A DNA stretch of 64,000 nucleotides. It comes from Macrostomum lignano. Taxonomy: Eukaryota. The notes beneath the pieces are model-generated. The model saw only the letters and a program-made list of their open reading frames with translations, ran no database searches and was not told the DNA's origin. Where the stretch lies: assembly GCA_002269645.1 (NCBI GenBank), contig NIVC01003045.1, positions 1-64,000 on the forward strand, given 5' to 3'. Position numbers and translations under genes: made by a program. This document shows positions 2,866 through 62,907 of this stretch, one piece after another. Each line of letters starts with the position of its first letter. Position 1 is the first letter of the stretch.

Positions 2866-4953
2866 ATGCCTCAAGAAGATTCAGGATTTGTCTTCGACCC
2901 TGAGCTGTCTAATCGCCTGACGGAGTGCCTGCGGTGCGATGACGTGCAGCGGATGCTGGCGGTGCTGTCTGCAGCTGGCCTCGGACCCGAACACCTCAGC
3001 GGCCATCTAAGCACCGACGCTGAGATGCAGCGATCGACTGGCTGCTGGACGAGATCCTCATCGGGCCGCACTTCATCTGCTCAGCGCTGCAGCGTCAGCT
3101 TCAGCACAATCGTTCACCTCAGCGTGCTCAGGCAGAGCTCACGGGTGCTGAGCTTCATCTCTGCTGAACAGCCTCACCTGCTCATGATGCGAGACGATTC
3201 TGGCTCAGGTGTTCTGCACTGTCTGGCGGAGGCGAGCGTGCTGCTCCGGCGGAAGAGTGCTACCGGCGGAAACACTCGCCTCTCGGAGCAGTTCGACGCG
3301 TTCCAGACTCGACTGCTCTCCATGCTAAGCGACGTCGAGAGTCCGTACTCGGAGCAGCAGTGAGTCCGATATTGTGTCTCATGTGTGAGTGAGCTCGAGC
3401 ACTGTCTCGCAGCTGGTCATGCAGTCTCGCTCCGTTTCAGATCTGCATCGAGTCTGCTGCACTCGCTGTGTCTCATGGAGAACTCGGACGGACTGAGACC
3501 GCTGGAGTTATCTGTTCTCATCGGAGCATACTCCACATTTCAGTGCATCCTGCACGTAAAAGGCTACATTCTGAGTAAGCAGGTGAGTCACGGCATTCGA
3601 GTTCGCAACACGTTTGACCTGCGGGAGTACGATCTGATGAAGGGTGAGCGGAGGGACAAGAATCCCATGCTCATGCTCACTCTGATCTCGGCGTCGGAGG
3701 CGGATCCACTGTCGGAGTCGGGACTGCTCGAGTGTCCTGTTATCAAGAAGTGGATGAAAGCAGTTGTTAGCGAGATGTCCTGCGCCATGTACATGCACAG
3801 AGCAGCCATTGTCATATTCACTTTGATCTTCTCTCCCATTACATTTTCGTTCGGGACCATATCCGCGATGCTGTGCGGCGGCTACCAGCTTCAGTTGGGG
3901 TTCTCCGAGTTCACCCAATATATGCGGTCGCTGATTAATGGCTCGCTGTCCAACGGGTCCTCAACCGAGGAATTCATTCGGCATGGCTGCCAGCCAGAAA
4001 ACCTATTCCGCTTCCTGATCACGGATCTAAATCCCGCGAACAGCCGTGTGCTGCTCCGGTCTCCAGTTTTCTTTACGCGGGTCACCCGGTCCAACATCAT
4101 TGCAAATCTCATCAGCGTCCTGATCCTCTTAGCAATATTTCAGGCCTTTAGACTGGTCACCATTGTTTACAACGTTGTCAAAGATCGACAGTTCTATTCA
4201 TCCCGATGGATGCCTGCCTCCAAGTCCGATTTTGTAGTTCAGTCGCACTTCTATGACGCAGTGTACGCGCTGTGCTTTGCAACGGGTCTGATCTATATAG
4301 TCTTGGCCAGCTTGTTGAGCAGATTCCTAGACTGCTCAGCTCTTGTCCTGGGCATTTCCAGCGGCACTTTCTGGCTGTCGGTGCTAACGCAATCCGCTGA
4401 GTGCTCGGCTGTTTTGTACTTCTTCTTCAACATGTTCGGCCTATTTGAGGCCTACGAAATGGCAGTGAAGCAGGCGGCTTTTCTCAGCATCTGCTTCCGG
4501 AAGATGTTGGTGAACTTCCTGCTGGTACTGCCGCTGCTGCTAGTCTGGGCCTACCTGGTGTTCGGCACCCTGCTCTACATGACAGACTTTCGAGGCCAGG
4601 AGTTTAGCTCGCATCGTCACGTGCTGTACTCCCCGCTGCGGCTGATTATTAACACGGCCAACCTGCCGCACCGGCTGTCTACCAGCCTTCTGCACACGCT
4701 GTTCGTTATCAGCGTGAGCATCAGCGTGCAGAACTTCATCATTGGCTATATTGTGAGCGCGTTCAAAGAGGTTTCGTCAAAATTTGACATTGTATACCAT
4801 TTGAGCGGCTTGGATGCTGCCTTGCGCACCTGGCGTCTCTACCCGGGTCTGCTCAGGGTGGTGCATCTGTGCAGGAGTAGCCGGAGTCCATTCTGTAAGA
4901 GACCGAGCAGCACTGCAATCCGGGTGTGGAGTCTTCGACCAACGGCCGGATAA
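2866..4953 (+). CDS. TRPV-like ion channel, copy 2 (exons 2866-3359 and 3441-4953, ~668 aa)
   Basis: Intron 3360-3440 (GTGAGT donor, ctccgtttcAG acceptor, phase 2) removes the in-frame TGA and joins the two ORFs. Ankyrin-like motifs (STIVHLSVLRQ; SGVLHCLA; ENSDGLRPLELSVLIG) are followed by a pre-S1 YDL...PVIKKW segment, six TM segments, an S4-S5 linker FRKML and S6 QNFIIGYI plus a TRP-box-like motif. All are colinear with TRPV architecture from recalled family motifs; no database search was run. Confidence 0.72.
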
Positions 4954-5977
4954 GATAGTAGATATTAAAGTGGTTTTTTGTGGTTTTTTATGCAATTCCT
5001 TTCTTCCTTTTTCGACCAGCATGACTGCTGTGTTCTTTGAAGATTTACCAAGAGAATGGCGTGTTCCGTTCATCAACTAAGCTCGCAGTGCCATGAAAAA
5101 TGCATTGTGCATTCATGTAACCCATCAATGTTAACTTTAGCTCGTACCGACCTATTGATATCGTTGAAATTTCTGTAAGACCGACCGTCTGATCATTTTT
5201 CCAGCCGTTCTACAATAAATATTTGAGATGAATCGATTGTATCGTGACGATAACTTTGCTTTAATAAAATGAAAAAACTATATTATCCAAGAGTACTTAT
5301 CGGTAGACATTACGGCACTACTTTCAATAGAGTGTGCAGTGTATTTACAGAAATCTATAAACGCAAAGCATATAGCAGCAGGGTTAGATAAGTCCCGGAT
5401 TTTGCCACCAAATGTAGGCGTAACCGAGAAAACGAGTCGCAAGCGCATGCCCTTTAAAATAATTGCTTTTTCATAGCGGATAGAGGGATCGCGGCGTAAT
5501 TATAAGTAATAATTGATAGATAAGTATTTATGCGTATAGCATTACAGAAGTTTGCACGCAAGAGATATATAAACACTTATTAGCATCGATTTAGTGGTGG
5601 TTTCGCTACCTCTGTCGCAACTTTGCGACCAACCAGAGACAGAGACGCGAGCAGAAGTACATGATAAGGTCATTGTCTGCGTTGCTATGGAGTGACTGCA
5701 GCGAAACAAGCGCTGAGACACTGCCCGGGAGGGGAAATAGAATCTGAGTTGCTAGACAAACGTATAACAAGTGTCGAATGAGAAAGGATATTACACAGGC
5801 GGGAACTGGTTTTGCATTGACAGACAAATTCATTGCTTTTCGCGGTAGCTCGGTTTGCTGCTTAATGTTTAACGGTCGATTTTTGAAACGCGCTGGCTTG
5901 CTTTTCTGACGAATCCTTTTCTAGAACTTGCTTTAGAGTGTTTTAAGAGGAGTAACACGGCCCTTTAGAGTGAGTTC

Positions 5978-6473: not shown

Positions 6474-6752
6474 TCAAGAGCAAATGCCGCCCTGCGGATG
6501 GACTACAAGCGAGGGATCCTTCAGGTCCACGCCTTGGTGGTGCATGTCCTCCTGCTTGAAGCTGCCCAGCTGCTCCATGTGGCCCATCAGCATGGCTCCA
6601 TGATGGTGCAGGCCGTGATGATGCTGCTGGTGAAGCTGATGGTGAGCCATGGCTGGACTGACTGACTCGGCTGACACGTTGTCCTCGGATGACCTTGTCC
6701 TGGTCTGCAGCTTCTTCTTCTTCATTCGACGGTTTTGAAACCAGACTTTCAC
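6474..6752 (-). CDS. Post2: Post2 posterior Hox gene, exon 3 (homeodomain helix 3 [14 protein letters not shown], His-rich C-terminus, TGA at 6474-6476)
   Basis: Acceptor cccgcAG at 6753-6755; phase 0 matches the exon 2 donor; WFQNRRMK motif. Confidence 0.93.
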   Translation of the reverse strand: MKVWFQNRRMKKKKLQTRTRSSEDNVSAESVSPAMAHHQLHQQHHHGLHHHGAMLMGHMEQLGSFKQEDMHHQGVDLKDPSLVVHPQGGICS

Positions 6753-7301
6753 CTGCGGGCGAGTGAGCGGGACAATCTCCATCATAGTGAGTCTGACGGA
6801 CTTTTAGGACATTCCACATGATAAAAAAGTGTTCTTTTTAATAAAAGGTTCGCAATCAAAACAGGATAGATCTACTGGGGTATTGTGAGACAGACTTTTA
6901 AGGATTCTACTCTCATCGCCACTACAAGTAGTTGACCAACCCTTACGAAAGGGTAGCGATAGGGTCAGATTGGTTCGAGTAGACTCCCACAGTCACAATC
7001 ACTTGTTACGGCTGGGGTTAGGGTTAGGGTTGCACACCCAAAGCACCCATATTATTCCCCGCGGCGAGTCCGAGGTTTATTGTCAGTTCTATCTATGACA
7101 ATGCATCACAGAATCGCGAAAGAAGTTCCTGATTAATCTGAAAATATGATGATCCACTCGCTTTCCATAAATAATGAGCTGTGTTTTTTAGACTACGTTC
7201 TCCGTTCTGTCATAGACTATTTTTTCAAATTATTTGTATAATATACTTAGTAGTCTACTTCCTAAGGCGACTATCAATAGTATGAAACGAGCATGGCTTA
7301 C

Positions 7302-7438
7302 CTGACGCTCAGTCAGATGCAGTTGGCAAGAAATTTCCCATCGTTTTTGCCGGGTGATGTAGGCGTTCATGAGGAACTCGCGCTCTAGCATGGCCGTCTG
7401 GTAGCGAGTGTACGGCTTGCGCTTCTTGCGGCTGCGCA
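7302..7438 (-). CDS. Post2: Post2 exon 2 (homeodomain residues 1-44, [43 protein letters not shown])
   Basis: Carries the lophotrochozoan Post2 signatures [11 protein letters not shown] and [15 protein letters not shown]. Acceptor gcAG at 7439-7441 (phase 1); donor GTAAG at 7301, at the canonical homeobox intron position 44/45. Confidence 0.95.
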
Positions 7439-7459
7439 CTGCGGGGGCGGCGGGTGGGG

Positions 7460-8310
7460 GAGAATCAGGTGAGGGCGGGTGGGGAATCACGTGAGAAGGG
7501 GTGGGGAATCAGGCGAGAGCGGGTGGGGAATCACGTGAGAAGGGGTGGGAATTGTAGATTTGTTTTAGGGGTAAGAAAAGGCTTGGCCACTGCGCGGCCT
7601 TGAGCGCCAATATATATATTTAGAAATCGATATTTGCGTGGGGTGGAGTTGCGCCTGATAAACAAGAAGCGTGCAAGCTAATTGGCTGCAGAGCGACCGG
7701 GGCAGGCATTGTACACTTGAGGGTCAGAGAGTTAAACGGTGTACGGCCAACAGGAATCAGGTGAGGGCGGGTGGGGAATCACGTGAGAAGGGGTGGGGAA
7801 TCACGTGAGAAGGGGTGGGGAATCAGGTGAGGGGGGTGGGGAATTGTGTGAATTGCAGGAGGATAATCAGGGGGAATTGCGGGAGGGGAATCAGGGATAT
7901 TTGCTGGAGAGGAATCAGGGTATTGCTGGAGAGGAATTAGGGGTATTGCTGGAGGGGAATCAGGGTATAGCTGGAGGGGAATCAGGGGTATTGCTGGAGG
8001 GGGATCTGGTGAATTGCGAGAGGGGGATCTGGTGAATTGCGAGAGGGAAAGCGGGTGAATTGCGGAAGGGGAATCAGGGGAATTGCGGGAGGATAATTAG
8101 GGGTATTGCGGGAAGATAATCAGCAGGGGAAGTGCGGGAGGTGAATCAGGGGAATTGCGGGACGTAAATCAGGTGAATTGCAGGAGGGGAATCAGGGGAA
8201 TTGCGGGAGGTGAATCAAGCTAATTGCGGGAGGTGAATCAGGTGAATTGCGGGCGGTGAATCAGGGGAATTGCGAGGGGGGATCACGTGAATTGCGGGAG
8301 AGGAATTGGG
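7460..8310. repeat. Degenerate GGGAAT(C/T)-based repeats in Post2 intron 1 (7460-7550 duplicated at ~7755-7840)
   Basis: Recurrent ggggaatcagg / gaattgcgggag units; a ~90-bp direct duplicate. Confidence 0.75.
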
Positions 8311-8723
8311 TGAATTCTTCTTAATAAAAAACAGACGGACGAGTTGGCCTCTTTCCTCTAGGATAGGGTCTACAAACAGAAATTTTTGCAAAAAAGATTG
8401 CGCTAAAAGCCACACTTCCCCTTAGACAGTTTAGGATCAATTAGTAAAATGCGCAGATTAACCATAAATTTTCTTTGATAATCATCAGACTCCGCGCAAA
8501 CGCCAGTAGCAACTGTCAACAGGCCAGCAGGCTATTTTTTGTCTCTTGGCTTTTAAAAGGTGAGGCGCTCTCAGCAACAGGGCAGATGATCGGTCAAATT
8601 TGGGTGGCTGCCTGGAAGCTGCTAATGGATTTTTCGGTTTTTAAGTGCCGCAAAGAGAGCATGCATGGGTGACCCCCATTGACCCCCCTCCGTGGACCCC
8701 GAAGCCCCGTGGGATGCACGTAC

Positions 8724-8852
8724 CGCCGGCTGCGGAGTCTGGATCAGCGAACTCGTCCAGCCGGGGCAGCATCATCTCGTGCGGAGCAAACAGGTACGAG
8801 CCACCGCCGACGCCACCGCCAGCGCCGCCGACTCCGACGACACCTCCGCGAA

Positions 8853-8886
<34 letters not shown>

Positions 8887-9504
8887 TTGCTGTTGTTGCT
8901 GATGCTGCTGCTGCTGCTGCTGCTGCTGGTGATGATGATGACTGTGAACTGCTGCAGCGGCCGCGGCCCCATAGAAGTCGGTGGGCGAGTGCAGGCCGGG
9001 GCGGCCGTGCCCGAAGCTGTGCGGGAAGCCGCCGCCAGTGGCAGCGGCCATGTGGCTGAGGAGGCCCTGCGACTGGGCCGCCTGCATGAAGTCCGGCGGG
9101 CCCGGGTACGCGCACGGGATCGGCGTGCCGCACTTGCCGACGCCGCCTGAACCCGGATGACCCGGCATGCCGCCGCCTCCGCCGCAGCCGCCGTTCACCG
9201 CCTGGGCGCTGCCGTAGTGAACTCGCGGATCGTACGGCCACATGTTGGCCGCGGCCTGCAAAGCTCCGTACCCGCCGCCGCCGCCGACGCTCCCGCCGCT
9301 GCTGTTGCCGTCGCTGTTGCGGCCGTCTTGAGGAAGCGAGCCGACGCAGCCTCCACCGCCGCCGCCACCGCCGCCGCCGCCAGAGCCCGACATTGCAGCG
9401 GCTGCGGCTGCTGCTGAAACTGCCGGCCCAGCGATTGCGGCGTAGGACGGTAGGCGGGAGCCGGGCGGGAACAGCCCGCTGCCGCTGGTTTCCATGGATA
9501 CCAT
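8724..9504 (-). CDS. Post2: Post2 exon 1 (Gly/Ala/Gln-rich N-terminus; probable start ATG 9504; total protein ~398 aa)
   Basis: GC-rich coding-like ORF with poly-Q, poly-G and poly-A. Donor GTACGT at 8723 is phase 1 and joins exon 2 in frame (G|TG = Val). The start codon choice is inferred. Confidence 0.82.
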
Positions 9505-9572
9505 GCTGTGCTCACCTGATTTAAGAATAGAATTACGGATTCGATTTTTTTTAATGCTCGACCCGTTTTCCA

Positions 9573-9830
9573 GGCTATGACTCATTCTCCAATCTATGAC
9601 TCATTCATTGAGCTATAACCCATTCTTTAGGCTATGACTCATTCTCCAATCTATGACCCATTCATTGAGCTATAACCCATTTTTTAGGCTATGACTCATT
9701 CTCCTATCTATGACCCATTCATTGAGCTATAACCCATTTTTTAGGCTATGACTCATTCTCCTATCTATGACCCATTCATTGAGCTATAACCCATTCTTTA
9801 GGCTATGACTCATTCTCCAATCTATGACCC
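9573..9830. repeat. 57-bp tandem repeat (~4.5 units)
   Basis: Unit starts at 9573 and 9630 (period 57): ggctatgactcattctccaatctatgacccattcattgagctataacccattcttta. Confidence 0.9.
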
Positions 9831-31072: not shown

Positions 31073-31290
31073 AGACGGTACAGGATGGTAAAAATGGTAC
31101 AGGATGAATTATAGGTTAGTACAGGATGGTAAAAACGGTACAGGATGAAATATAGGTTAGTACAGGATGGTAAAAACGGTACAGGATGAAATATAGATTA
31201 GTACAGGATGGTAAAAATGGTACAGGATGAAATATAGGTTAGTACAGGATGGTAAAAACGGTACAGGATGAAATATATATTAGTACAGGG
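31073..31290. repeat. ~41-bp tandem repeat (~5 units)
   Basis: Unit tacaggatggtaaaaacggtacaggatgaaatataggttag. Confidence 0.9.
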
Positions 31291-31592
31291 TGAAATATTG
31301 ATTGATAAACGATGGAAAGGACGCTGCAATAAATGGTCAAAGAAATTTTACTTTCGTCGCCCACTTTTATATCTGCATGCCTAATTTGCTACTAGTAGTA
31401 ATACTTGCAGATTTCTATTACTATGGAATTCGAACCTAGAAATTTCAGGCCGAATGAGGTCCTTGTCTTCTACGATATATAAGTTCAGAGAGCGTTATTT
31501 GGTAGAGTACGACTGAGTAGAGCCCGTAATCAATTGAGGACGAGTGACTTGTACAAGACTGTACGCAGAAAGCCGAGAGAGGACCAGATTTG

Positions 31593-32215
31593 TACAGGAT
31601 TGTAGAGACATTAGTACAGGATTGTAGAGACATTAGTACAGGATTGTAGAGACATTAGTACAGGATTGTAGAGACATTAGTACAGGATTGTAGAGACATT
31701 AGTACAGGATTGTAGAGACATTAGTACAGGATTGTAGAGCCATTAGTACAGGATTGTAGAGACATTAGTACAGGATTGTAGAGACATTAGTACAGGATTG
31801 TAGAGACATTAGTACAGGATTGTAGAGACATTAGTACAGGATTGTAGATACATTAGTACAGGATTGTAGAGACATTAGTACAGGATTGTAGAGACATTAG
31901 TACAGGATTGTAGAGACATTAGTACAGGATTGTAGAGACATAGGTACAGGATTTTAGAGACCTTGGTACAGGATTTTAGAGACATTGGTACAGGATTTTA
32001 GAGACATTGGTACAGGATTTTAGAGACATTGGTACACGATTTTAGAGTCATTGGTAGAGGATTTTAGAGACATTGGTACACGATTTTAGAGACATTGGTA
32101 CAGGATTTTAGAGACATTGGTACACAATTGTTGACATTGATACAGGGTTTTAGAGACATTGGTATACAATTGTAGAGACATTGGTACAGGGTTGCAGAGA
32201 CATTGGTACGGCATT
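31593..32215. repeat. 22-bp minisatellite
   Basis: Unit gtacaggattgtagagacatta. Confidence 0.95.
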
Positions 32216-32261
32216 GCAGAGGCATTGGGGAAATATATTGCTGTTGCTGGCCATGGCAGGC

Positions 32262-32353
32262 AGGTATTCCTGTAGATACGAGCTTCTGCTTTTGAGGTGT
32301 GAAAACTGATACAGCCATTTCGAAGTCAGCAAAAGCTTGCATGTACAGGACAC
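32262..32353 (-). ncRNA. mir-993: miR-993-like microRNA precursor (miR-10 family); predicted mature 3p GAAGCUCGUAUCUACAGGAAUA at 32286-32265
   Basis: The 3p arm matches recalled insect miR-993-3p (GAAGCUCGUCUCUACAGGUAUCU) at 19 of 22 positions with an intact seed. It pairs with a 5p arm UCCUGUACAUGCAAGCUUUUGC (32350-32329) that ends in GCUUUUG like miR-993-5p. Location upstream of Hox3 fits the known Hox3-Hox4 position. Confidence 0.85.
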
Positions 32354-32789
32354 CCGGACTCTGCTGTTTTCGTTCACCTGACTTTAGTTGCTTGACTTTG
32401 AGTTGCTTTCCAGTTCGAATCGCTTTTGCACCGGCCCTCTTTTAGTCTGTCTGTTTCTCTCTCTTCTGGGCAAGTTGCTTTTATGCCACTTTTATAGCAG
32501 CCCCTTCTCCAAGAATATTTTATGGGTTCCTGCAGCCTCTTAAAACTCGACCCAGTGGGGGGTTACAAGCAACTAGCTAAAAACTCTGAAATTTTATTAT
32601 AACAAATCGTGTCCTTCGAGCATCTGATTCTACATGAAGTTTTGCCGCAATTGCAGCAGTGTATGGCGCGCTTTGACTGCTGAACACTATGGGCTGTCAC
32701 CCGCGGACACCGAGAGCTAGGAGTCTGGCCAGCAGGCAATGGAGCTCTGGTTTGGCTGGAGGGCATTTTTCCACACATCTTTGGGCTCT

Positions 32790-33130
32790 GTGAAATTTCG
32801 GTTTTGTGAGATTTCGGATTTTGAGATTTCGGATTTTAAAGGTTTCGGATTTGTGAAGCTTTGAGTTTGTGAAATTTCGGTTTTGTGAGATTTCGGATTT
32901 GCGAAGTTTTGGGGTTTGTGAACTTTCGGTTTTGTGAGATTTCGGATTTGTGAGATTTCGGTTTTGTGAGATTTCGGATTTGTGAGTTTTCGGATTTGTG
33001 AAATTTCGGTTTTGTGAGATTTCGGATCCGTAAGGTTTCGGATTTGTGAAGTTTTGGGTTTGTTAAATTTCGGTTTCGTGAAATTTCAGAGTTTGTGAAA
33101 TTTCGGGTTTGTGAAATTTCGGGTTTGTGA
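32790..33130. repeat. Degenerate ~17-bp repeat
   Basis: Variants of gagatttcggatttgt. Confidence 0.85.
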
Positions 33131-33544
33131 AACGACGCCCCAAGGAAAATGTCCTAAAATGTGTTTACTAAAATGTAATTTCCAGAAAAAGGCGTTTACT
33201 TACTTACCACTCACTACTTGCCGCTGCTCCATGCGATCTCTGTCAAGCCTGTGGACTAATGGTCTGCATCATACTACAGTGCATATGAGGGTTTGTTCAT
33301 GCAGCAGCTCGAACGCGACTGACAATAGAAGCATTTGAAACTCTACTAGCTATTCTATACTGTAATTTCAACCAATCAACTCTTAGCTGTAGAAGAGATT
33401 GGGGCCAGCGCGAGTTTATTGCGTTTTTTGGCATCCAGGCTGACCAAACCCACTCTTAAAGCTTGAAGTGAAAGGCAACCCGCCGTGGCTGTGAGTTTCA
33501 GTTTGTCGCTCAAAATATCAACTAGAGCGGTTTGTGTAGCTGAA

Positions 33545-41922: not shown

Positions 41923-42190
41923 ATGACTGGGGTGCAGCGCAACTCGCAGCAGCACAGAGCAGGGATGCATCAGCAGCATCAGCAGATGCTGCATGGCGGT
42001 CTACCACATCCAATCTATCCCTGGATGATGGAGACTCGAGGCCACAGCGCTGGCGGAGCAGGAGGCGGCGGCGGTGGCGGTGGCCATAGCCGATCCGCTT
42101 CAAGGACAGCTCAGTCGGGACGTCAGTCTGCAGTGGACGGCGTCGGCTTTGACATGGAATCGGCGACCGAGTTTAGCAAAGGAGATGCTG
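41923..42190 (+). CDS. Hox3: Hox3 exon 1 with hexapeptide IYPWM
   Basis: Encodes PIYPWM (Pbx-interaction motif). Donor GTAAGT at 42191 is phase 1 and compatible with the acceptor at 47545. Further upstream exons cannot be excluded. Confidence 0.85.
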
Positions 42191-42224
42191 GTAAGTGAAG
42201 ACTTTGAAGCTGCGGAGAGATGGG

Positions 42225-43620
42225 CGAGAGAGAGAGAAATGCAGGGAGATAACAGAGAAGGGAGATAAGGGAGATAAGAGAGAAATGTAGGGAGATAACA
42301 GAAACGCAGGGAGGTAAGAGAGAAATTGCAGGGAGATATGCGAGAGCGAGAGAGAAATGCAGGGAGATGTGCGAAAGAGAGAGAGGAATGCAGGGAGATG
42401 CGCGAGAGAGAGAGGAATGCAGGGAGATGCGCGCGAGAGAGAGGAATGCAGGGAGATGCGCGCGAGAGAGAGAGGAATGTAGGGAGATGTGCGAGAGAGA
42501 GAAATGCAGGGAGATGTGCAAGAGAGAGAAATGCAGGGAGATGTGCGAGAGAGAGAAATGCGGGGAGATGTAGGGAGATAAGAGAGAAACGCAGGGAGAT
42601 AAGAGAGAAATGTAGAGAGATAAGCGAGAAACGCAGGGAGATAAGAGAGAAACGCAGGGAGATAAGAGAGAAACGCAGGGAGATAAGAGAGCAACGCAGG
42701 GAGATAAGAGAGAAGCGCAGGGAGATAAGAGAGAAGCGCAGGGATATAAGAGAGAAGCGCAGGGAGATAAGAGAGAAGCGCAGGGAGATAAGAGAGAAAC
42801 GCAGGGAGATAAGAGAGCAACGCAGGGAGATAAGAGAGAAACGCAGGAAGATAAGAAAGAAACGCAGGGAGATAAGAGAGCAACGCAGGGAGATAAGAGA
42901 GCAACGCAGGGAGATAAGAGAGAAACGCAGGGAGATAAGAGAGAAACGCAGGGAGATAAGAGAGAAACGCAGGGAGATAAGAGAGAAACGCAGGGAGATA
43001 AGAGAGCAACGCAGGGAGATAAGAGAGCAACGCAGGGAGATAAGAGAGAAACGCAGGGAGATAAGAGAGAAACGCAGGGAGATAAGAGAGCAACGCAGGG
43101 AGATAAGAGAGCAACGCAGGGAGATAAGAGAGCAACGCAGGGAGATAAGAGAGCAACGCAGGGAGATAAGAGAGAAGCGCAGGGAGATAAGAGAGCAACG
43201 CAGGGAGATAAGAGAGAAGCGCAGGGAGATAAGAGAGAAACGCAGGGAGATAAGAGAGCAACGCAGGGAGATAAGAGAGAAACGCAGGGAGATAAGAGAG
43301 AAACGCAGGGAGATAAGAGAGCAACGCAGGGAGATAAGAGAGCAACGCAGGGAGATAAGAGAGAAAGGGAGATAAGAGAGAAGCGCAGGGAGATAAGAGA
43401 GCAACGCAGGGAGATAAGAGAGAAGCGCAGGGAGATAAGAGAGAAACGCAGGGAGATAAGAGAGAAACGCAGGGAGATAAGAGAGCAACGCAGGGAGATA
43501 AGAGAGCAACGCAGGGAGATAAGAAAGAAACGCAGGGAGATAAGAGAGCAACGCAGGGAGATAAGAAAGAAACGCAGGGAGATAAGAGAGCAACACAGGG
43601 AGATAAGAGAGAAACGCAGG
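42225..43620. repeat. 21-bp purine-rich minisatellite in Hox3 intron 1
   Basis: Unit gcagggagataagagagaaac. Confidence 0.95.
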
Positions 43621-45154
43621 AAGAAAGAATTCGGAGTCAGAGAAAGAAACGCGGGCAGATCCGGAGAGAGATAAACGCAGTGAAAGGGCATGAACTGACT
43701 GTGTGTGAACAGAGACAGCAAGCCCCTTTGCTATAATATTTTAACTCCACGCGCGTATCAAAGTCGCAAATGGATGCTCTTCAGGCTGAGAATCGAGCCC
43801 AGTCAGTCCCGATGCCTGCGCAGCATTCAAGCAAGGGGGTGTCAGTGCGGTCCATATTTACAGCGGCCAACTGTGGCACCGAAGAGGGCACTGGGAGATT
43901 TACATCCCCGAACTTCTGGCACTAATAAATTTTCACTGCCTCGAATTCCCAAGTGTTACGACGGGTTGCTGGGATGTACTCCAATCTTCCGACGAAATGT
44001 GCTATTGATTTTTAAGTGGCACTTGGCAAACAATAGAGCCCAAGTCATTAATTAATACGAGCGTAATTACTGATTATGATAGGCGTCACAGAAATCACAA
44101 TAGTTTTGGCTAATATCTGAGATTTCTCCGCGTGCCTCATATGCTATGCCATCGGGAGTTGATTGGGGCGGAAGGTTTAGCGGATGGTGGATCATTTGTC
44201 AAATATGAGCCCTCACGCCAGATTGAAGATGAAGAGAGAGAGAGAGATGGGGAGAGAAGTCTGGAGGCTGGGGGGGGGTATCGGCCCTCTCTCGTGACAA
44301 GACCCCGGGAGCTGCCCGCGGTGCATCGAAGCAGAGGGGGCGGGGGCGGAAGGGCGGGGCCAGGTTGCCGTGATGGCAAGCGGCGGCTTTGAAGCGAGCC
44401 GCCACTGCTGGCTGTGGGGGAGTTCAGGAACGGCAAAAACTCCCGTGAGCTGCACCTCTGCGCCAGAGCCACGTGAGCAGCAGGCCCTGCGAGGGAGCTC
44501 ACCGCGGGGCACCGGGCAGAGGAGGAGGATCAGGAGAAAGTCAATTAATCTTAGCCGGCCGGTGCACTGGGGGAGGGTCCGGGCGGAGGAGGCAGGGATG
44601 GAGGGCGGGGAACTGATGATGAATGACGGCCGAAGCTTCGCTTTTGTCTGTCTGCGGCCGCGGCGGCAGGAGCAAAGCAGACGAGGAAAATGGGAAGGAA
44701 GAGGCTGTGAGGCTGGGTTGGCGGGGGGGGGTATAATTTCTGTTTTGCATATTTTTCATGATGCCGAATCTACAGAAGAAGAATGGCCGCCACCTCCCCC
44801 CCCCTCATCGGAGCCGAGAATTCGCGAACGAGGAGGAGAGCTCGCGGCTCTCGAGCTCCGCCTCGGATGGCCAGGCGGGCCTGACAGAGGCGGCTCAGCG
44901 GCCGACTGGGTGGAGATTGATGATTCTGCTTCCGTATTCTGCAGCGGCTGCCAGGCAAAGAATTCTCAGCCGCTGCCCCCCTTCCCCCAGGGGGACTTCA
45001 GAATCAGCACTGCTAATTCTACCTTTGGTTTCCCACCTGCTCAGCTTGGGCCGCAGGAAATGTATAAAATGAAGCTGATGATGGGGTGCTTGCTTTGTTT
45101 AGTTGGCCACTGACTTGCTGACCAACTCGTTTAGTTGGTGCTCTCTGATTCAAC

Positions 45155-45612
45155 AAAGTGGCGCCTCTGAGGGCTCAAAGTGGCATTCCCGACTGACACA
45201 AAGTGGCACCTCTGAGGGTTCAAAGTGGCAATTCCCGACTGACACAAAGTGGCACCTCTGAGGGCTCAAAGTGGCAATTCCCGACTGACACAAAGTGGCA
45301 CCTCTGAGGGTTCAAAGTGGCAATTCCCGACTGACACAAAGTGGCACCTCTGAGGGTTCAAAGTGGCAATTCCCGACTGACACAAAGTGGCACCTCTGAG
45401 GGCTCAAAGTGGCAATTCCCGACTGACACAAAGTGGCACCTCCAAGGGCTCAAAGTGGCATTCCCGACTGACACAAAGTGGCACCTCCAAGGGCTCAAAG
45501 TGGCATTCCCGACTGACACAAAGTGGCACCTCTGAGGGCTCAAAGTGGCATTCCCGACTGACCAAAGTGGCACCTCTAAGGGCTCAAAGTGGCAATTCCC
45601 GACTGACACAAA
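45155..45612. repeat. 45-46-bp tandem repeat in Hox3 intron 1 (~10 units)
   Basis: Unit caaagtggcacctctgagggctcaaagtggcaattcccgactgaca. Confidence 0.92.
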
Positions 45613-47545
45613 GACTCTTGTGCTGATAAATTGTGCCGCAACAAATATCTGAATATTTCAATCTCATTATTAGCATTGGATCAGGGGAATCTGTACGCAC
45701 ATAAAGTTGGTCTGCCTCCCCATAAATACCATATTGCATTTATCAGTTGGTAGCAAGGCTGCTTATACCAACCGCAATAAATTCAAGATTCTCTCGCTTA
45801 AAACGATAATTATAGTTCAGCGCGGCATCGACAGCGCCAACAGCCTCGGCAACAAACTGGAAAAATGGGGGGGCTGCTCCATCTTCTCCGGGAACGAGAG
45901 GCTGGATGGCTGCAGCCGAATCAGGTCTGGGGGTCATAAATAACTCAGAGAGGAGAGGGGGCGGCAGCGGCGCACCTTGCCAGAGCCTTCATCTTGGCCA
46001 GCTAAGGGAAAAGTCTTGCCGCGCTTTGCCTTGACTGCATGGCAAATTGTTGTGAAGTCAAGCAAAATTTATTAACCTTCATGGATTCTGGCTGCGGGTT
46101 GATGTAGCTTACGCTCGTAGTTTCCTGGCAACTATTAGAATAGTTTAACTGTCCCACAACTAGTAAGGATAATTGGATAAAAATTTTAATAAATTAAAAT
46201 CACTTATTTTATTGATTAGATTTTTTGTTTTTCAGTCTAATTTAAGTATGTCATTCTATCGCAACACCCCAGATGTTTTTTTTCAGATTGGAAATGCAAA
46301 ATTGCATATCAACAAACAAAAACCAAAGTTCCCTGACCTTCAAGATAACTTCTTTTGATGCAAAAATATGAAAGCGATTTAAATCTGGCTTCAGAATCCT
46401 GGAATTTTAGAATTGCTTTTAATTTAAAAAACAACCCGCGGCCCCCTCTACCGTTACAAAATCGAAATTCAAGCGTCCATGCCACTTCGAACTGCGGGTT
46501 GCCATGCGGCCAATACGGAAAAGATTAAGGCGGAGGAAATGATTGATGCCGGTGTCAAACTTGATTGCAGTCGCTACCTCCCCTCCCCTCCGACCTCACG
46601 GGGTTTGAAGTCGAGTTTTGCTTCCGCAGTAGTCAGCCGTGCGCATCGCTGCTGCTGCTGTACACTACGTGTGCGATTGTGCAGTCCGATAGCCACCACA
46701 AGATAATACACAGCTAACTTACTATCAGGGGCAAAGTTTTAAAGAGGCCACGCAAACAGCTGCTGTGCTTAATTTTCCAACTGATATTTTCCTGTCAAAT
46801 GTGCGGATTGGAGGAGAGGCGGAAAGGAGATTAGGGAACCTATAGAATGAGAGGGTAATTGTAACCCAGGAAGCATCCACTATGCATGCAGGCGGAGGCA
46901 CTTTGCGACACCACAGCTCCACTTCAAACTGTCGATTGTTTGTAGCTTATGGACACCTCGCTACACTGCAGTTGCTTGGCTGATTGGCCCTAGCTAGAAG
47001 CAGCGAGAGACGGCTTAGATACTGAAGTCATGAAAAGTTTCTTGCGCCAGACTATACTCACAATTAGTTTTGTGGCTCGAGTACGAAAATCGGGCTTGGG
47101 CCATCCAAGGCACAGAGTGTACATATGCCTGACGGTCAGACAGTCAGGCCCCGCTGAACACCTTTTGCGAGTGTGTGCTTGTGTACGTATCTAATTCCTC
47201 TCGTGAGCTGACTAACTAACACCTACTGAAGCTGAAAATGAAGCTCGGCTGCTTAGGTCCATGGCCAATTAAAAAAAAACATATTATATACTTTGTGCAT
47301 CATCTGTCATGTGCAACCCAGAGGCATTGCCTGTTGTTCTGTTGCCTGTTGTTGAAAGATCAGAAAAAAGCGATTGGCTGAAGCCATAAGTCACAGGCTG
47401 ACGTAGGCATCAAACGGGGTTAAAATTTCAAATGTTTCATCTCTGGGGGAAGTCATCTTTGCCTTTGCGTCACCTTTGCTTTCGCCTCTGGGTGAGTATT
47501 CGCATCGCATTAACTACCAACGCCTTCAATCCGAACATTTCACAG

Positions 47546-47819
47546 ACTCGGCCATCGGCTCGGCATCGAAGCGGATTCGCACGGCCTACACAAACGCGCA
47601 GCTGGTCGAGCTTGAGAAGGAGTTCCACTTCAACCGCTACCTGTGCCGGCCAAGACGCATCGAACTGGCCAATTCGTTGAGTCTCAGCGAGCGCCAGATC
47701 AAGATCTGGTTTCAGAACCGGCGCATGAAGTACAAGAAGGACCAGAAACTGGTCAGGGAGCAGGACATGCGGCTGCGGCACCTCAGACAGGCCGACGGGC
47801 CGCCCCATCTTATTAAAGA
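47546..47819 (+). CDS. Hox3: Hox3 exon 2 (complete homeodomain [60 protein letters not shown])
   Basis: Paralog-group-3 residues ([26 protein letters not shown]; MKYKKDQK). Acceptor tttcacAG at 47544-47545; donor GTAAGT at 47820 (phase 2). Confidence 0.95.
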
Positions 47820-48135
47820 GTAAGTACGGAATTAAATGACCGTTTCAGCTACTAACAGTAGCGGATGCGTAAGTAATGCCATTAATCGATGAATTATTAT
47901 TAATAGACTGGTAGAAATTGCATTAAACTACGAGTACATTAACAAGTTGTATGATATTTATACCTAGCTTTATGCAAAAAACTGGATCCAGCTATAAAAG
48001 TGCTAAAGCTGTCATTAAGCAGCCAATTTTTTAAATATGCACATATGCTGTAGGACCTGAAGCAAAGTTAAACAGGACAAGCCACGTCAATCAAAGAAAT
48101 CCAAAGAAAAGTTCAATTTGCCGTCTCCTCTGCAG

Positions 48136-54899: not shown

Positions 54900-55160
54900 T
54901 GAAAGGTAATTTCCTCTCCACATGGAGCACCAGACCGCTGATGTGATGAACCACTGCTGGCAGCGTGCGTCTGCGTCGTGGCATGTCAGGTCCGCTGATA
55001 CGTCAGCAGACACAGTCAGCATCTCGGTCTTCAATATGCTGTCAACGCTTGAACCCACCTCTTTCTGTGCTTTCAACAGACGAGAAAAAGAGGCTGAGGT
55101 CGCCAGCGTTGCCAAACAAGCTCAGGTGTTTTTTGCCGCTGTGGCGAACGATGCGTCTCC
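54900..55160 (-). mobile_element. Short older RTE-like fragment
   Basis: catgtcaggtccgct...cacagtcagca aligns with 53985-54020 of the neighbouring LINE fragment. Confidence 0.6.
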
Positions 55161-55189
55161 ACAACAGATAAAAAAGCAGGAAGAAATCT

Positions 55190-56330
55190 CTCCATTTCAG
55201 CATTCGAGGTGTGCCACGAAGCTCACAGATGTTCAATTGAAAATATATTTTTTGTGTAAGGTCTACTCAGATGTTATATTGCAAAAATGCTTTAAGTTTA
55301 ATTTTAAAAAGATTTTCCTTACTGTAGTATGCATTTGATTTTTTTGTACAGTCACCATCTACGTCGTAAATTCTAAAGAAAATTCACTCCATTTCAGCAT
55401 TCGAGGTGTGCCACGAAGCTCACAGATGTTCAATTGAAAATATATTTTTTGTGTAAGGTCTACTCAGATGTTATATTGCAAAAATGCTTTAAGTTTCATT
55501 TTAAAAAGATTTTCCTTGCTGTAGTATGCATTTGATTTTTTTGTACAGTCACCATCTACGTCGTAAATTCTAAAGAAAATTCACTCCATTTCAGCATTCG
55601 AGGTGTGCCACGAAGCTCACAGATGTTCAATTGAAAATATATTTTTGGTGTAAGGTCTACTCAGATGTTATATTGCAAAAATGCTTTTAGTTTAATTTTA
55701 AAAAGATTTTCCTTGCTGTAGTATGCATTTGATTTTTTTGTACAGTCACCATCTACGTCGTAAATTCTAAAGAAAATTCACTCCATTTCAGCATTCGAGG
55801 TGTGCCACGAAGCTCACAGATGTTCAATTGAAAATATATTTTTTGTGTAAGGTCTACTCAGATGTTATATTGCAAAAATGCTTTTAGTTTAATTTTAAAA
55901 AGATTTTCCTTGCTGTAGTATGCATTTGATTTTTTTGTACAGTCACCATCTACGTCGTAAATTCTAAAGAAAATTCACTCCATTTCAGCATTCGAGGTGT
56001 GCCACGAAGCTCACAGATGTTCAATTGAAAATATATTTTTTGTGTAAGGTCTACTCAGATGTTATATTGCAAAAATGCTTTTAGTTTAATTTTAAAAAGA
56101 TTTTCCTTGCTGTAGTATGCATTTGATTTTTTTGTACAGTCACCATCTACGTCGTAAATTCTAAAGAAAATTCACTCCATTTCAGCATTCGAGGTGTGCC
56201 ACGAAGCTCACAGATGTTCAATTGAAAAGATATTTTTTGTGTAAAGTCTACTCAGATGTTATATTGCAAAAATGCTTTTAGTTGAATTTTAAAAAGATTT
56301 TCCTTACTGTAGTATGCATTTGATTTTTTG
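55190..56330. repeat. 197-bp AT-rich satellite (~5.8 units)
   Basis: tccatttcag recurs at 55191, 55388, 55585, 55782, 55979 and 56176. Confidence 0.95.
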
Positions 56331-60400: not shown

Positions 60401-61818
60401 CTTTGTGTAACTTTGTGAACATGTGAGACTGTCACACTAGACACCATCCCAGACAGCTACCCATCCTTTCCTGCCTAGAGTTAGGCAAGGCCATTTAATA
60501 TTCAAGCAATTTAATTTATAAGTTTCATTTCATATTTTTATTTCTATTTTAAAGTTTTATATTTTTCTCATAATTGTAGGTTTCTTGTCTATCCTTGTTG
60601 AAATTTTCAATCTTCTACAAAATCTTGTAATAAAATCTGCCATTGTACTTTTTTAAAATGCTTAATTAGGCTTCAATTCAATTAGGCTATTCAGTCAATA
60701 TTGTAATCGTATGTACTTAACTCTTTCTTTGGCTAGACTAAAATAGTCTGAAGTTCAAAAACCTTAAATGTATTCATATCCATCATTAAAATATAATTTA
60801 TATGAAATATAATCTACCAAAATTCTGAAAATGGGTTAGGTGCAAGTGCCATGCCACAAGTTCTTTTGTGGCAAGAATTACAACAATAAGAAACAACAAT
60901 TAATTGAGATGACCGGATTTTCAGTTCTCGGTTCAGTTCCGAAATTTAAATTAATTCACTCCGGATTGCCTCTAAATAGTTAGTGTATAAACAAAGTAAA
61001 AACATTTCTGCTCCAATTGCACTTAAACATCAAATAAAAAGCATTGCCATTGCAAGAGATTTTTAAATTATATTATTTTTTTATGATAGTTTTAAATTTT
61101 ATTGTATTTTTTTCGTCAGTCATTTTAGCGCGCATATGAAACTTATGCACACGAAATTCAAAAGCACATTGCTTTGGAAGTGCTTTGAATGAGAATACAC
61201 TAAGGCAAAGGCAGTGGCGCAACCAGGTGGGGGCGGGGGGCGGTCTGGTGCCCCCAGGTCTGAGACCCAAAAAATCAAAGAATCAAAGGGGGGACCAAGC
61301 GAACTTTCGCCAAAACAGAGCCACCCCGTCCGCCCCACCTCCCGGGACTTTACCCTCCAGAATCCGCCCCCTCATAAAATTTCTGGTTGCACTACTGAAC
61401 GAAAGTTTCCTTACACACCCTCTCTTCAATATAAATTTATAATTATATTATATTTCAATATAAAATTATAATATTAATTACATATTATAATTATAATTAT
61501 AATTATAATTTTACTTACATGTATATTAATTATATAATTAAAAAAGATATTTAATTTATCTGCACTTTCTTTAAAAATTTAACCTCATAAAAATAAAATA
61601 TAAGCATTAAAAGTCATGCTCAAATGTCTTTTGCTGAGCAAAACTGTCACTCTATAATGATGGTATTAAATATTTACGCGTAGATGAACTTTGTTTTAGT
61701 TTTTAGTTACTCTTAAGACTAGAAAAAAAATCACCTGGGACTATATGAAGTATAACTTGTTTCAACTAATTGTTTTACTTAAATGAATAAAAAATATATA
61801 CACTGTAAAAGTTAGCTC

Positions 61819-62800
61819 ATAACAGCAACAACAACAACAAATTATATGCAGCTAGCAATCAAAGTCACAGAGCAGGGTGCTTCAGATGGCGCGCCGCAGA
61901 GCCTGAGAGCGGACGAAGTCCGCTCCGTTGGCAGTGTCGGGCGCCCTGGCGTCGCGTACGTAGGAGGCAGTCCACGTATCGACGGGTTTGGGCCTGACCC
62001 CGCCTGAGCGGGCCCTGCAGAGTGAGCAACAGGACGTCCTGAACAGGTTGGGGGCAGTAGCCCTCGGCCCGGATCACGTACGTGGCCCGCCAGTTGAAGT
62101 CGCCGCCGGCGCAGGATGGTGGACGGGCGCTGCAGCTTGGCCCGATCGTACAGGGCCTCAGTCCCGACGCTCTCGTCAGCTCGAAAGGTCGCACGGAGCA
62201 GCCCTGAATGCGCCGAGTCCAGCTGCCGCTCTAAGCGTAGCCGTCAGTGTCCACGTCTCGGCGTTGTAGAGCACACCGCCTGCCACAGCCGACGAGCCCT
62301 CTGGCGGTCGGGCAGCGCTTCGGACTGGACGTCGGCCCGGATCGAACGGAAGGCCGCCCAGGCAAGTCCTCGGCGCCGCCCGATCGAGGTCTTCGTCCAC
62401 GTGAGGCACCAGACAGCCGAGTAGGTGATCCCGCTGGTAGCGTGCGCGCGAGCGTGGTCATCTGCCCGTCTGCGAGGCGACATGTCAGGTCCGCTAGCGC
62501 TGGGATGTCGGCCGGCACAGTCAGCACCTAGGTCTTTAGCGTGTTTACAACCAGTTCCGACGCTCAATGCCACCTTGACCAACCTGTCGATCTGGCGGGA
62601 TGCCACCTTGAACGGATGAGGACAGGAGGGCGAGTTCGTCGGCGTAGCCAAGCAAATAATAATAAGGCGCTTTTCGCCGTGGCGGCGACCGATGCGTCTG
62701 CGCAGCGCAGGAAGCCGTCGTTAGCCGAGGAGACTGCGGTCCGAAGCACCCAGTGGCAGCAGCACGAAGAGAAACGGCGCCAAAGTGTCGCCATGCAGAA
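61819..62800 (-). mobile_element. Duplicate of the degenerate RTE-like fragment at 53310-54290
   Basis: Same sequence at +8509. Confidence 0.85.
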
Positions 62801-62850
62801 CTCCTGATGAAGTGTCGAACTGATGATGATTTACATGTATGTAATCGCCC

Positions 62851-62907
<57 letters not shown>

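What the first reader, a model, noticed from the sequence alone, without database searches (positions are those of the whole stretch)
32262..32353. Hidden miR-993 hairpin upstream of and antisense to Hox3
Seen: the minus-strand hairpin GUCCUGUACAUGCAAGCUUUUGC...[~44-nt inter-arm region]...GAAGCUCGUAUCUACAGGAAUA sits in a ~570-bp unique island between two minisatellites. Established: miR-993 is a miR-10-family miRNA between Hox3/zen and Hox4/Dfd, with the 3p arm (seed AAGCUCG) as its main product. Here the 3p arm is conserved (19/22 against the recalled fly sequence) while the 5p arm has drifted, as expected for 3p dominance. Inference: an ancestral Hox-cluster miRNA has stayed with Hox3 after the cluster broke up. 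The inter-arm region is unusually long.
Basis: partly seen in the sequence, partly recalled or inferred. Interest (0 to 1): 0.8.

Follow-up and report, generated by a model that had tools for sequence, protein, structure and literature searches.

The report
miR-993 hairpin upstream of Hox3
The hairpin is real and is most likely this animal's copy of miR-993 (MirGeneDB name Mir-10-P4), a microRNA long known to sit beside Hox3 in protostome Hox clusters, so it is a sound but ordinary find.

Summary
A stable minus-strand hairpin lies at 32256-32364. Its arms are at 32352-32330 (5p) and 32286-32264 (3p). It sits in a 562-bp unique stretch between two minisatellites.

The 3p arm, GAAGCUCGUAUCUACAGGAAUAC, matches published insect miR-993-3p at 19 of 22 positions and has the same seed, AAGCUCG. 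I built two covariance models without the window sequence. One used 13 mir-993 hairpins recovered from metagenomes; the other used 14 curated arthropod mir-993 hairpins. Each hits the 64-kb window once, at this hairpin on the minus strand (33.7 bits, E 1.6e-6; 26.8 bits, E 3.6e-5). A mir-10 model does not hit it.

One negative result stands. Rfam's broad mir-10 family model scores the hairpin far below its threshold, although it detects arthropod mir-993 hairpins.

The host is an unidentified lophotrochozoan. The hairpin is about 9.6 kb upstream of the Hox3 hexapeptide (YPWM) exon, on the opposite strand. That is the expected Hox3-Hox4 side.

- The long inter-arm region is normal for this family; fly and mosquito have similar ones.
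- The antisense orientation is probably ancestral.
- Hox3 is not isolated: a Post2-type Hox gene lies head-to-head with it, 32 kb from its first coding exon.

Expression was not tested. This is a new member of a known kind and of low interest.

The parts
32256..32364 (-). Whole predicted hairpin: basal stem, miRNA duplex and apical region. This is the likely Microprocessor substrate within the pri-miRNA.
   Evidence: MFE structure, -43.2 kcal/mol, z -3.66. It is the only hit in the window for mir-993 models R1 (33.7 bits, E 1.6e-6) and R2 (26.8 bits, E 3.6e-5).
32330..32352 (-). 5p arm (predicted passenger strand), UGUCCUGUACAUGCAAGCUUUUG. The ends are inferred from the family alignment and a 2-nt overhang geometry.
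   Evidence: It aligns to the family 5p consensus UACCCUGUAGAUCCGGGCUUUUG, with 13-17 of 23 matches to curated mir-993 5p arms. Pairing table.
32287..32329 (-). 43-nt inter-arm (apical) region. The first and last 4 nt extend the stem, and a small internal stem-loop lies inside.
   Evidence: The length is comparable to Drosophila and Anopheles mir-993 and to loci L014 and L067.
32264..32286 (-). 3p arm (predicted mature miR-993-3p), GAAGCUCGUAUCUACAGGAAUAC, seed AAGCUCG.
   Evidence: 19 of 22 matches to published insect miR-993-3p. 17-20 of 23 matches to curated mir-993 3p arms, against 12-13 of 23 to mir-10 3p arms. The seed and the UCUACAGG block are invariant or nearly so across the family.
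31588..32226 (.). Flanking 22-bp minisatellite (29 copies), downstream of the hairpin on the minus strand.
   Evidence: The repeat unit resembles the hairpin no more than shuffled units do.
32789..33132 (.). Flanking 16-bp minisatellite (21 copies), upstream of the hairpin on the minus strand.
41923..42100 (+). Hox3 exon encoding the hexapeptide (…HPIYPWMMETR…). The hairpin lies about 9.6 kb upstream of it on the other strand. The exon's 3' boundary is not defined.
47476..47823 (+). Hox3 homeobox exon (homeodomain at 47566-47745), running to the stop codon.
   Evidence: tblastn gives 85% identity to a Hox3 homeodomain. ORF. The best database hits are Hox3 proteins.
6474..9585 (-). Post2-type posterior Hox gene, head-to-head with Hox3, in three coding blocks (about 9585-8641, 7490-7299, 6794-6474). 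The homeobox is split by an intron at homeodomain position 44/45. The hairpin lies 22.7 kb upstream of it on the same strand.
   Evidence: The best named hits are lophotrochozoan Post2 proteins.

Best explanation
This is the mir-993 (MirGeneDB Mir-10-P4) gene of a lophotrochozoan. It is a canonical animal microRNA precursor of the MIR-10 family, in its conserved position on the Hox4-facing side of Hox3 and on the strand opposite Hox3.

Inferred mechanism: a minus-strand primary transcript folds into the roughly 108-nt hairpin. Drosha/Pasha cuts about one helical turn above the basal junction, near 32352 and 32264. Dicer cuts near 32330 and 32286 despite the large apical region. The 3p strand GAAGCUCGUAUCUACAGGAAUA(C) is loaded into Argonaute and represses mRNAs that carry matches to the seed AAGCUCG.

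Shown here: the hairpin, its family-specific sequence in both arms, the strand preference, and the position next to Hox3.

Inferred only: transcription, the cleavage sites, 3p dominance and the targets.
For: 1. Fold: -43.2 kcal/mol, z -3.66, with 19 of 22 3p nucleotides paired and a basal stem of about 9 bp.
2. The 3p arm matches published insect miR-993-3p at 19 of 22 positions with an identical seed.
3. A scan of metagenome contigs for the 17-nt core returned 120 stretches. Only those with an upstream CCYTGTA motif are hairpins, and these 13 distinct loci are clear mir-993 genes. The mite-like ones are nearly identical to Tetranychus mir-993b.
4. Model R1, built from those 13 loci without the window sequence, hits the window only at 32266-32349 on the minus strand (33.7 bits, E 1.6e-6). 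The plus strand scores 18.5 bits.
5. Model R2, built from 14 curated arthropod mir-993 hairpins (PMC4862073, supplementary file 5), gives the same single hit (26.8 bits, E 3.6e-5; plus strand 16.8 bits).
6. Model R3, built from 13 curated mir-10 hairpins, does not hit the site at E <= 10.
7. The window keeps 15 of the 16 consensus stem pairs.
8. Context: the site is about 9.6 kb upstream of the Hox3 hexapeptide exon. mir-993 is classified by its position next to Hox3 and is known in arthropods, nematodes, annelids and molluscs, with 3p dominance (PMC3049427, PMC12257675, PMC12220506, PMC3290615).
9. The same upstream, opposite-strand layout relative to the neighbouring anterior Hox gene is seen in locus L029. 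Ixodes coordinates put mir-993 and mir-10 on opposite strands.
Against: - Rfam's mir-10 family model (RF00104, gathering score 47.5 bits) gives nothing at threshold. On the hairpin alone it gives 12.6 bits on the plus strand and no minus-strand match at E <= 10. The same model scores arthropod mir-993 hairpins at 37-60 bits. This copy is therefore clearly more diverged than arthropod copies.
- Two consensus pairs are weakened in the window: a C·C mismatch where the family has G-C, and an A·C mismatch.
- No covariation is available, because the family stems are nearly invariant.
- The metagenome set was collected with the 3p motif, so the 3p match to R1 is partly built in. R2 does not have this problem.
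- No orthologue from a close relative could be fetched, and there are no expression data.
- The lophotrochozoan-specific mir-10 paralogues (mir-10b, mir-10c, mir-1991) could not be tested for lack of sequences.
Confidence: 0.8

Rival explanations
1. This is a decaying relic of mir-993. The hairpin is homologous to mir-993 but is no longer transcribed or processed, and it survives in a region overrun by minisatellites.
For: The hairpin is far below Rfam's mir-10 threshold, whereas arthropod copies score 37-60 bits. The stem has two new mismatches. 45% of the surrounding intergenic interval is tandem repeat. Lophotrochozoans can carry extra mir-993 copies (PMC3049427 and PMC6160089), so a redundant copy could decay.
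Against: The seed and 17 contiguous 3p nucleotides fit the family pattern exactly. The stem is still very stable. 15 of 16 consensus pairs are kept. New pairs (AUGC with GUAU) replace the family's internal loop. A neutral relic would not be expected to keep both arms complementary.
Confidence: 0.1
2. The locus is read from the plus strand, or from both strands as at mir-iab-4/iab-8. That would give a miR-10-like 5p product (UAUUCCUGUAGAUACGAGCUUCUG) in the same orientation as Hox3.
For: The plus strand folds nearly as well (-41.2 kcal/mol, z -3.2). The mir-993 models give it weak hits (18.5 and 16.8 bits, E about 0.02). Rfam's mir-10 model aligns slightly better to the plus strand (12.6 bits).
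Against: The minus strand scores 10-15 bits higher with both mir-993 models. The mir-10 model R3 gives no hit on either strand. The plus-strand 5p would not carry the miR-10 seed in register. The family's invariant 3p seed is only present on the minus strand.
Confidence: 0.06
3. It is a different MIR-10 family member. Candidates are mir-10 proper, mir-99/100 (whose 3p arm can share the AAGCUCG seed; I state this from memory of hsa-miR-99a-3p), or a lophotrochozoan-specific Hox-cluster paralogue (mir-10b, mir-10c or mir-1991).
For: All these genes share ancestry and are similar in both arms. The window 5p arm matches mir-10 5p arms almost as well as mir-993 5p arms (14-15 against 13-17 of 23). 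Sequences of the lophotrochozoan paralogues were not available to test.
Against: The mir-10 model gives no hit. The 3p arm matches mir-993 at 17-20 of 23 positions but mir-10 at only 12-13 of 23. The 5p arm has CCUGUA (the mir-10/993 type) and not CCCGUA (the mir-100 type), and it ends GCUUUUG as in mir-993. mir-100 is linked to let-7 and mir-125, not to Hox genes (PMC3049427), and Rfam finds neither in the window.
Confidence: 0.03
4. It is a chance inverted repeat in repeat-rich DNA.
For: The window is 29% tandem repeat. The 8-mer UCCUGUAC also occurs in the neighbouring minisatellite units.
Against: The family-specific E-values are 1.6e-6 and 3.6e-5 over the whole window. The core motif is expected 0.02 times. 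The hairpin lies in unique sequence. None of the roughly 90 chance matches to the motif in bacterial contigs has the complementary arm.
Confidence: 0.01

Closest known systems
mir-993 / Mir-10-P4 of arthropods (for example dme-mir-993 MI0005854, tca-mir-993, isc-mir-993)
   Same: Same hairpin architecture. The 3p seed AAGCUCG and the UCUACAGG block are identical. The 5p arm keeps the CCUGUA and GCUUUUG blocks. The gene lies next to Hox3 on the Dfd/Hox4 side. Long apical regions also occur in fly and mosquito.
   Different: Seven to ten 5p substitutions (for example GAUCC to CAUGC and CGGGC to CAAGC). The 3p arm has A at position 10 (also seen in Metaseiulus) and ends GGAAUAC where arthropods have GGUAUCU. 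The conserved UCA before the 3p arm is GCA here. The hairpin is not recognised by Rfam RF00104. The host is a lophotrochozoan.
mir-993 / Mir-10-P4 of annelids and molluscs (Capitella, Lottia, Eisenia, Platynereis)
   Same: Same clade as the host (the posterior Hox gene is Post2-type). These are reported as Hox-cluster residents with 3p as the mature arm (PMC12257675, PMC3290615, PMC6160089).
   Different: No direct sequence comparison was possible. I could not obtain these hairpins. The Lottia and Capitella loci I fetched turned out to be Hox2 and held no mir-993 within 10 kb.
mir-10 (Mir-10-P1), the parent gene between Hox4 and Hox5
   Same: Same family and same fold. The 5p arm shares CCUGUA. 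Both are embedded in Hox clusters.
   Different: The 3p arm differs (AAAUUCGGUUCUAGAGAGG in mir-10). mir-10 is 5p-dominant in most species and is transcribed in the same direction as the Hox genes. The mir-10 covariance model does not hit the window.
Metagenomic mir-993 loci L005, L055 and L003 (unknown hosts)
   Same: They share the window's 5p variants CUGUACA and CGAGC/CAAGC. L003 also has an inter-arm region of about 27 nt.
   Different: They have the usual UCA before the 3p arm (L003 has ACA) and U or C at 3p position 10. Their hosts and genomic context are unknown.

Membership tests
mir-993 / Mir-10-P4 (MIR-10 family) | An imperfect hairpin of about 35 bp with at least 16 paired nucleotides between the two roughly 22-nt arms. 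| tested here: met
   19 of 22 3p nucleotides are paired, with a basal stem of about 9 bp; -43.2 kcal/mol, z -3.66.
mir-993 / Mir-10-P4 (MIR-10 family) | A 3p arm of the form GAAGCUCGUnUCUACAGG with seed AAGCUCG. | tested here: met
   Exact match to the 17-nt core. 19 of 22 matches to published miR-993-3p. The block is invariant or nearly so in 14 curated and 13 metagenomic hairpins.
mir-993 / Mir-10-P4 (MIR-10 family) | A 5p arm of the mir-10/993 type (ACCCUGUAG…GGGCUUUUG). | tested here: met
   The window has UGUCCUGUACAUGCAAGCUUUUG. The CCUGUA and GCUUUUG blocks are kept, with 13-17 of 23 matches. This feature discriminates weakly against mir-10, which matches at 14-15 of 23.
mir-993 / Mir-10-P4 (MIR-10 family) | A significant score against a covariance model of known mir-993 hairpins that is better than the score against mir-10. 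| tested here: met
   R2 (curated): 26.8 bits, E 3.6e-5, the only hit in the window. R1 (metagenomic): 33.7 bits, E 1.6e-6. R3 (mir-10): no hit.
mir-993 / Mir-10-P4 (MIR-10 family) | Position in the Hox cluster between Hox3 and Hox4/Dfd. This is the criterion used to tell mir-993 from mir-10 in PMC3049427. | tested here: inconclusive
   The Hox3 side is met: the site is about 9.6 kb upstream of the Hox3 YPWM exon. The next Hox gene on the other side is an inverted Post2-type gene, not Hox4.
mir-993 / Mir-10-P4 (MIR-10 family) | Small-RNA reads with a uniform 5' end, 2-nt 3' overhangs and 3p dominance. | not testable with these tools
   No expression data are available, and the species is unidentified.
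Rfam RF00104 (mir-10 precursor family: mir-10, mir-99, mir-100 and mir-993) | A score at or above the curated gathering threshold of 47.5 bits. | tested here: not met
   No hit at threshold. 12.6 bits on the plus strand and no minus-strand match at E <= 10. Positive controls: five arthropod mir-993 loci score 36.8-60.5 bits, two of them above threshold.
mir-10 proper (Mir-10-P1) | A match to a covariance model of mir-10 hairpins, with 3p arm AAAUUCGGUUCUAGAGAGG. | tested here: not met
   R3 gives no hit at the locus at E <= 10. The 3p arm matches at only 12-13 of 23 positions.
mir-99/100 (Mir-10-P2) | A 5p arm ACCCGUAGAUCCGAACUUGUG (no U after CCC) and linkage to let-7 and mir-125. | tested here: not met
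   The window 5p arm has CCUGUA. Rfam finds no let-7 or mir-125 anywhere in the 64 kb. The linkage rule is from PMC3049427.

The most novel reading that the evidence does not exclude
Because of the rearrangement, mir-993 now lies in a shared divergent intergenic region, 22.7 kb upstream of a posterior (Post2-type) Hox gene and on the same strand. The hairpin could be carried on a long Post2 upstream transcript, or be transcribed from both strands as at iab-4/iab-8. An ancestrally 'anterior' Hox-cluster miRNA would then have been brought under posterior Hox regulation.
Probability: 0.1. Interest if true: 0.5.

Novelty: new member of a known kind. Interest (0 to 1): 0.22.

Why it matters
In itself it matters little. 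miR-993 (Mir-10-P4) is a well-documented protostome Hox-cluster miRNA, and finding it beside Hox3 is expected. It has two modest uses.

- It marks ancestral synteny. If the hairpin stayed with Hox3, the rearrangement breakpoint that brought a Post2-type gene next to Hox3 lies in the roughly 23 kb between Post2 and the hairpin.
- It shows how far a copy can diverge. This copy escapes Rfam's mir-10 model but is recovered by subfamily-specific models, which is a caution for automated miRNA annotation of non-model spiralian genomes.

Tried and rejected
- **Rfam scans.** I scanned the whole window, a 701-nt region and the hairpin alone. None gave a usable hit. A control run showed that the model does detect arthropod mir-993, so the negative result reflects divergence and not a gap in Rfam.
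- **Identifying the organism.** The Hox3 exon search returned only homeodomain-level hits. The 522-aa ORF at 3385-4953 had no homologue. The posterior Hox gene pointed to lophotrochozoan Post2 but had no near-identical hit. Bryozoans are excluded because they lack Hox3. The species stays unknown.
- **Fetching spiralian or arthropod Hox3 neighbourhoods** to compare hairpin and orientation. The Lottia and Capitella proteins were Hox2. Four true Hox3 loci (two metagenomic, a spider and a water bug) had no mir-993 within 10 kb. Folsomia Dfd was not on record.
- **Minisatellites derived from the hairpin, or acting as seed-match sponges.** The shared 8-mer is no better than shuffled units give (p about 0.3-0.5).
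- **Seed-match sites for the 3p arm.** There are 6 on the plus strand and 4 on the minus strand, about the number expected in 64 kb. They include one in the Hox3 homeobox (47607) and one 1.4 kb past the Post2 stop codon (5079). They are not evidence of targeting.
- **Covariation support.** None is available, because the family stems are almost invariant.
- **Orientation of mir-993 in the literature.** The papers I read give orientation only in figures. I relied on L029 and on coordinate order in supplementary table S1 of PMC4862073.

Full report
**The observation**

A 116-nt segment folds into one long hairpin of -43.2 kcal/mol. That is 3.66 standard deviations below dinucleotide shuffles; 2 of 200 shuffles fold as well.

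The pairing table shows the following:
- The 3p arm (32286-32265) has 19 of 22 nucleotides paired.
- Four more base pairs lie above the duplex.
- A bulged basal stem of about 9 bp lies below it.
- The apical region is 43 nt and contains a small internal stem-loop.

If Dicer and Drosha leave 2-nt overhangs, the 5p arm ends at GCUUUUG (32330), where family members end, and begins at 32350-32352.

Tandem Repeats Finder puts a 22-bp array at 31588-32226 and a 16-bp array at 32789-33132, so the hairpin sits in 562 bp of unique sequence. The plus strand folds nearly as well (-41.2 kcal/mol), so the strand has to be assigned by homology.

**Is it miR-993?**

Published insect miR-993-3p is GAAGCUCGUCUCUACAGGUAUCU (Bombyx in PMC2824724, Diabrotica in PMC9170749). 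The window arm GAAGCUCGUAUCUACAGGAAUA matches it at 19 of 22 positions and has the same seed. The 17-nt core AAGCTCGTNTCTACAGG occurs once in the window, against 0.02 matches expected by chance even with two mismatches allowed.

To get independent family members I scanned the metagenome contigs for that core. Most of the 120 stretches returned are chance matches in bacterial DNA with no complementary arm. Thirteen distinct loci have an upstream CCYTGTA motif and fold as textbook mir-993 hairpins. Several are nearly identical to Tetranychus mir-993b.

The window hairpin aligns to these 13 in both arms. A covariance model built from them without the window sequence (R1) was run over all 64 kb with filters off. 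It hits only 32266-32349 on the minus strand, at 33.7 bits and E 1.6e-6. The plus strand of the same site scores 18.5 bits.

That set was collected through the 3p motif, so I repeated the test with curated sequences. The alignment in supplementary file 5 of PMC4862073 gives 14 arthropod mir-993 and 13 mir-10 hairpins.
- The mir-993 model (R2) again finds only this site: 26.8 bits, E 3.6e-5, with 16.8 bits on the plus strand.
- The mir-10 model (R3) does not report the site at E <= 10.

Arm by arm:

| Window arm | Matches to mir-993 (of 23) | Matches to mir-10 (of 23) |
|---|---|---|
| 3p | 17-20 | 12-13 |
| 5p | 13-17 | 14-15 |

The 5p arm is therefore much less discriminating. mir-99/100 is disfavoured for three reasons. 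The 5p arm has CCUGUA and not CCCGUA. The arm ends GCUUUUG as in mir-993. mir-100 travels with let-7 and mir-125 rather than with Hox genes (PMC3049427), and Rfam finds neither in the window.

**The negative result**

Rfam's broad mir-10 family model (RF00104, gathering score 47.5 bits) does not detect the hairpin. It gave no hit at threshold on the whole window and none at E <= 10 on 701 nt. On the hairpin alone it gave 12.6 bits on the plus strand and no minus-strand match at E <= 10.

The same model scores five arthropod mir-993 loci at 36.8-60.5 bits. The failure therefore reflects real divergence of this copy: 5p substitutions, two weakened stem pairs and a 43-nt apical insert relative to a 74-position model. 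I record formal membership of RF00104 as tested and not met. Membership of the mir-993 subfamily is supported by the dedicated models.

There is no covariation evidence either way, because the family stems are almost invariant. The window keeps 15 of the 16 consensus pairs.

**Context**

- The Hox3 homeodomain is on the plus strand at 47566-47745.
- Its hexapeptide exon (…IYPWMMETR…) is at about 41923-42100.
- The hairpin is therefore about 9.6 kb upstream of the first recognisable Hox3 coding exon. This is the side where Hox4 lies in a canonical cluster, and mir-993 is known to lie between Hox3/zen and Dfd (PMC4862073, PMC9933525, PMC12220506).

The next gene on that side is not Hox4. It is a posterior Hox gene on the minus strand (about 9585-6474), with its homeobox split at homeodomain position 44/45. 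Its best named hits are lophotrochozoan Post2 proteins from annelids, molluscs, nemerteans, phoronids and brachiopods.

So the host is a lophotrochozoan. Its species could not be identified: no near-identical protein exists in the database, and bryozoans are excluded because they lack Hox3.

Post2 and Hox3 lie head-to-head, and the hairpin is on the Post2 strand, 22.7 kb upstream of the Post2 start codon. A single inversion of a Hox4…Post2 block, with one breakpoint between Hox4 and mir-993, would produce this arrangement. That is inference.

**Orientation and loop length**

Neither is unusual.
- In metagenomic locus L029 (a mite-like genome), mir-993 lies 5.2 kb upstream of a pb/Hox2 homeobox on the opposite strand. 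That is the same layout as here.
- Drosophila and Anopheles mir-993 have inter-arm regions of about 44-46 nt, and loci L014, L067 and L003 have 27-34 nt.

The window's 5p variants (CUGUACA, CAAGC) recur in loci L005, L055 and L003. The 5p arm has therefore not simply drifted at random.

**Mechanism**

The best-supported reading is a canonical miRNA gene. A minus-strand pri-miRNA would be cut by Microprocessor about 11 bp above the basal junction. Dicer would then cut, and the 3p strand with seed AAGCUCG would be loaded into Argonaute.

3p dominance is documented for the family in flies, locusts, crayfish and annelids (PMC3049427, PMC12257675). It is inferred here, not shown.

A CNNC motif lies 15-18 nt downstream of the predicted 3p end (sequence). 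This is weak support, because such motifs are common by chance.

Targets are unknown. Seed matches in the window occur at chance frequency.

**Verdict**

The main interpretation, a miR-993 (Mir-10-P4) orthologue retained beside Hox3, is supported at about 0.8 confidence. The remaining doubt is mostly about whether the gene is still expressed.

This is a new member of a well-known kind and of low interest. Its main value is as a synteny marker for the Hox3/Post2 rearrangement, and as an example of a diverged copy that Rfam misses.

Noticed in passing
window 6474-9585 (-) and 41923-47823 (+): A Post2-type posterior Hox gene (homeobox split by an intron at homeodomain position 44/45) lies head-to-head with Hox3, 32 kb from its first coding exon. 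This is a non-canonical Hox neighbourhood. It recalls the sea-urchin arrangement in which Hox3 abuts a posterior gene (stated from memory). A single inversion of a Hox4…Post2 block would explain it.
   Followed up: partly
window 519-1670 (+) and 3385-4953 (+): Two paralogous long ORFs (383 and 522 aa) rich in hydrophobic, transmembrane-like segments lie just beyond the 3' end of the Post2 gene. They have no Pfam domain and no homologue among 5.8 billion proteins. They may be a lineage-specific gene pair.
   Followed up: partly
window 52389-~55480 and 60898-64000: A direct duplication with a spacing of about 8510 bp; the three sampled 300-nt segments are 100% identical. It includes the start of a 197-bp satellite (55190-56329) and duplicated 138-aa ORFs (54922-55338 and 63433-63849). 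It is either a very recent tandem duplication or an assembly artefact.
   Followed up: partly
whole window, especially 9585-41900: Minisatellite load is extreme. Twenty-seven high-scoring tandem arrays with unit sizes of 4-197 bp cover 29% of the window and 45% of the Post2-Hox3 intergenic interval.
   Followed up: yes
window 31078-31303 and 31588-32226: Two arrays next to the hairpin carry GTACAGGA on the plus strand 31 times in total. This 8-mer is the complement of nucleotides 1-8 of the putative 5p arm. The similarity between repeat unit and hairpin is no greater than for shuffled units, so it is probably coincidence.
   Followed up: yes
L029 689-859 (-) and 6070-6153 (+): A metagenomic contig from a mite-like genome carries mir-993 5.2 kb upstream of a pb/Hox2 homeobox, on the opposite strand, with no Hox3 between them. 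This matches the published Tetranychus arrangement.
   Followed up: partly
L124 1220-1819 and 10001-10462: An ENA contig (482 kb) from an unidentified compact animal genome has two homeobox genes 8 kb apart; the second is Hox3. No mir-993 was detected within 10 kb of it.
   Followed up: no
window 47607-47613 (+) and 5079-5085 (-): Seven-nucleotide matches to the miR-993-3p seed occur inside the Hox3 homeobox (the ELEKEF codons) and 1.4 kb downstream of the Post2 stop codon. Their number in the window is at chance level.
   Followed up: partly
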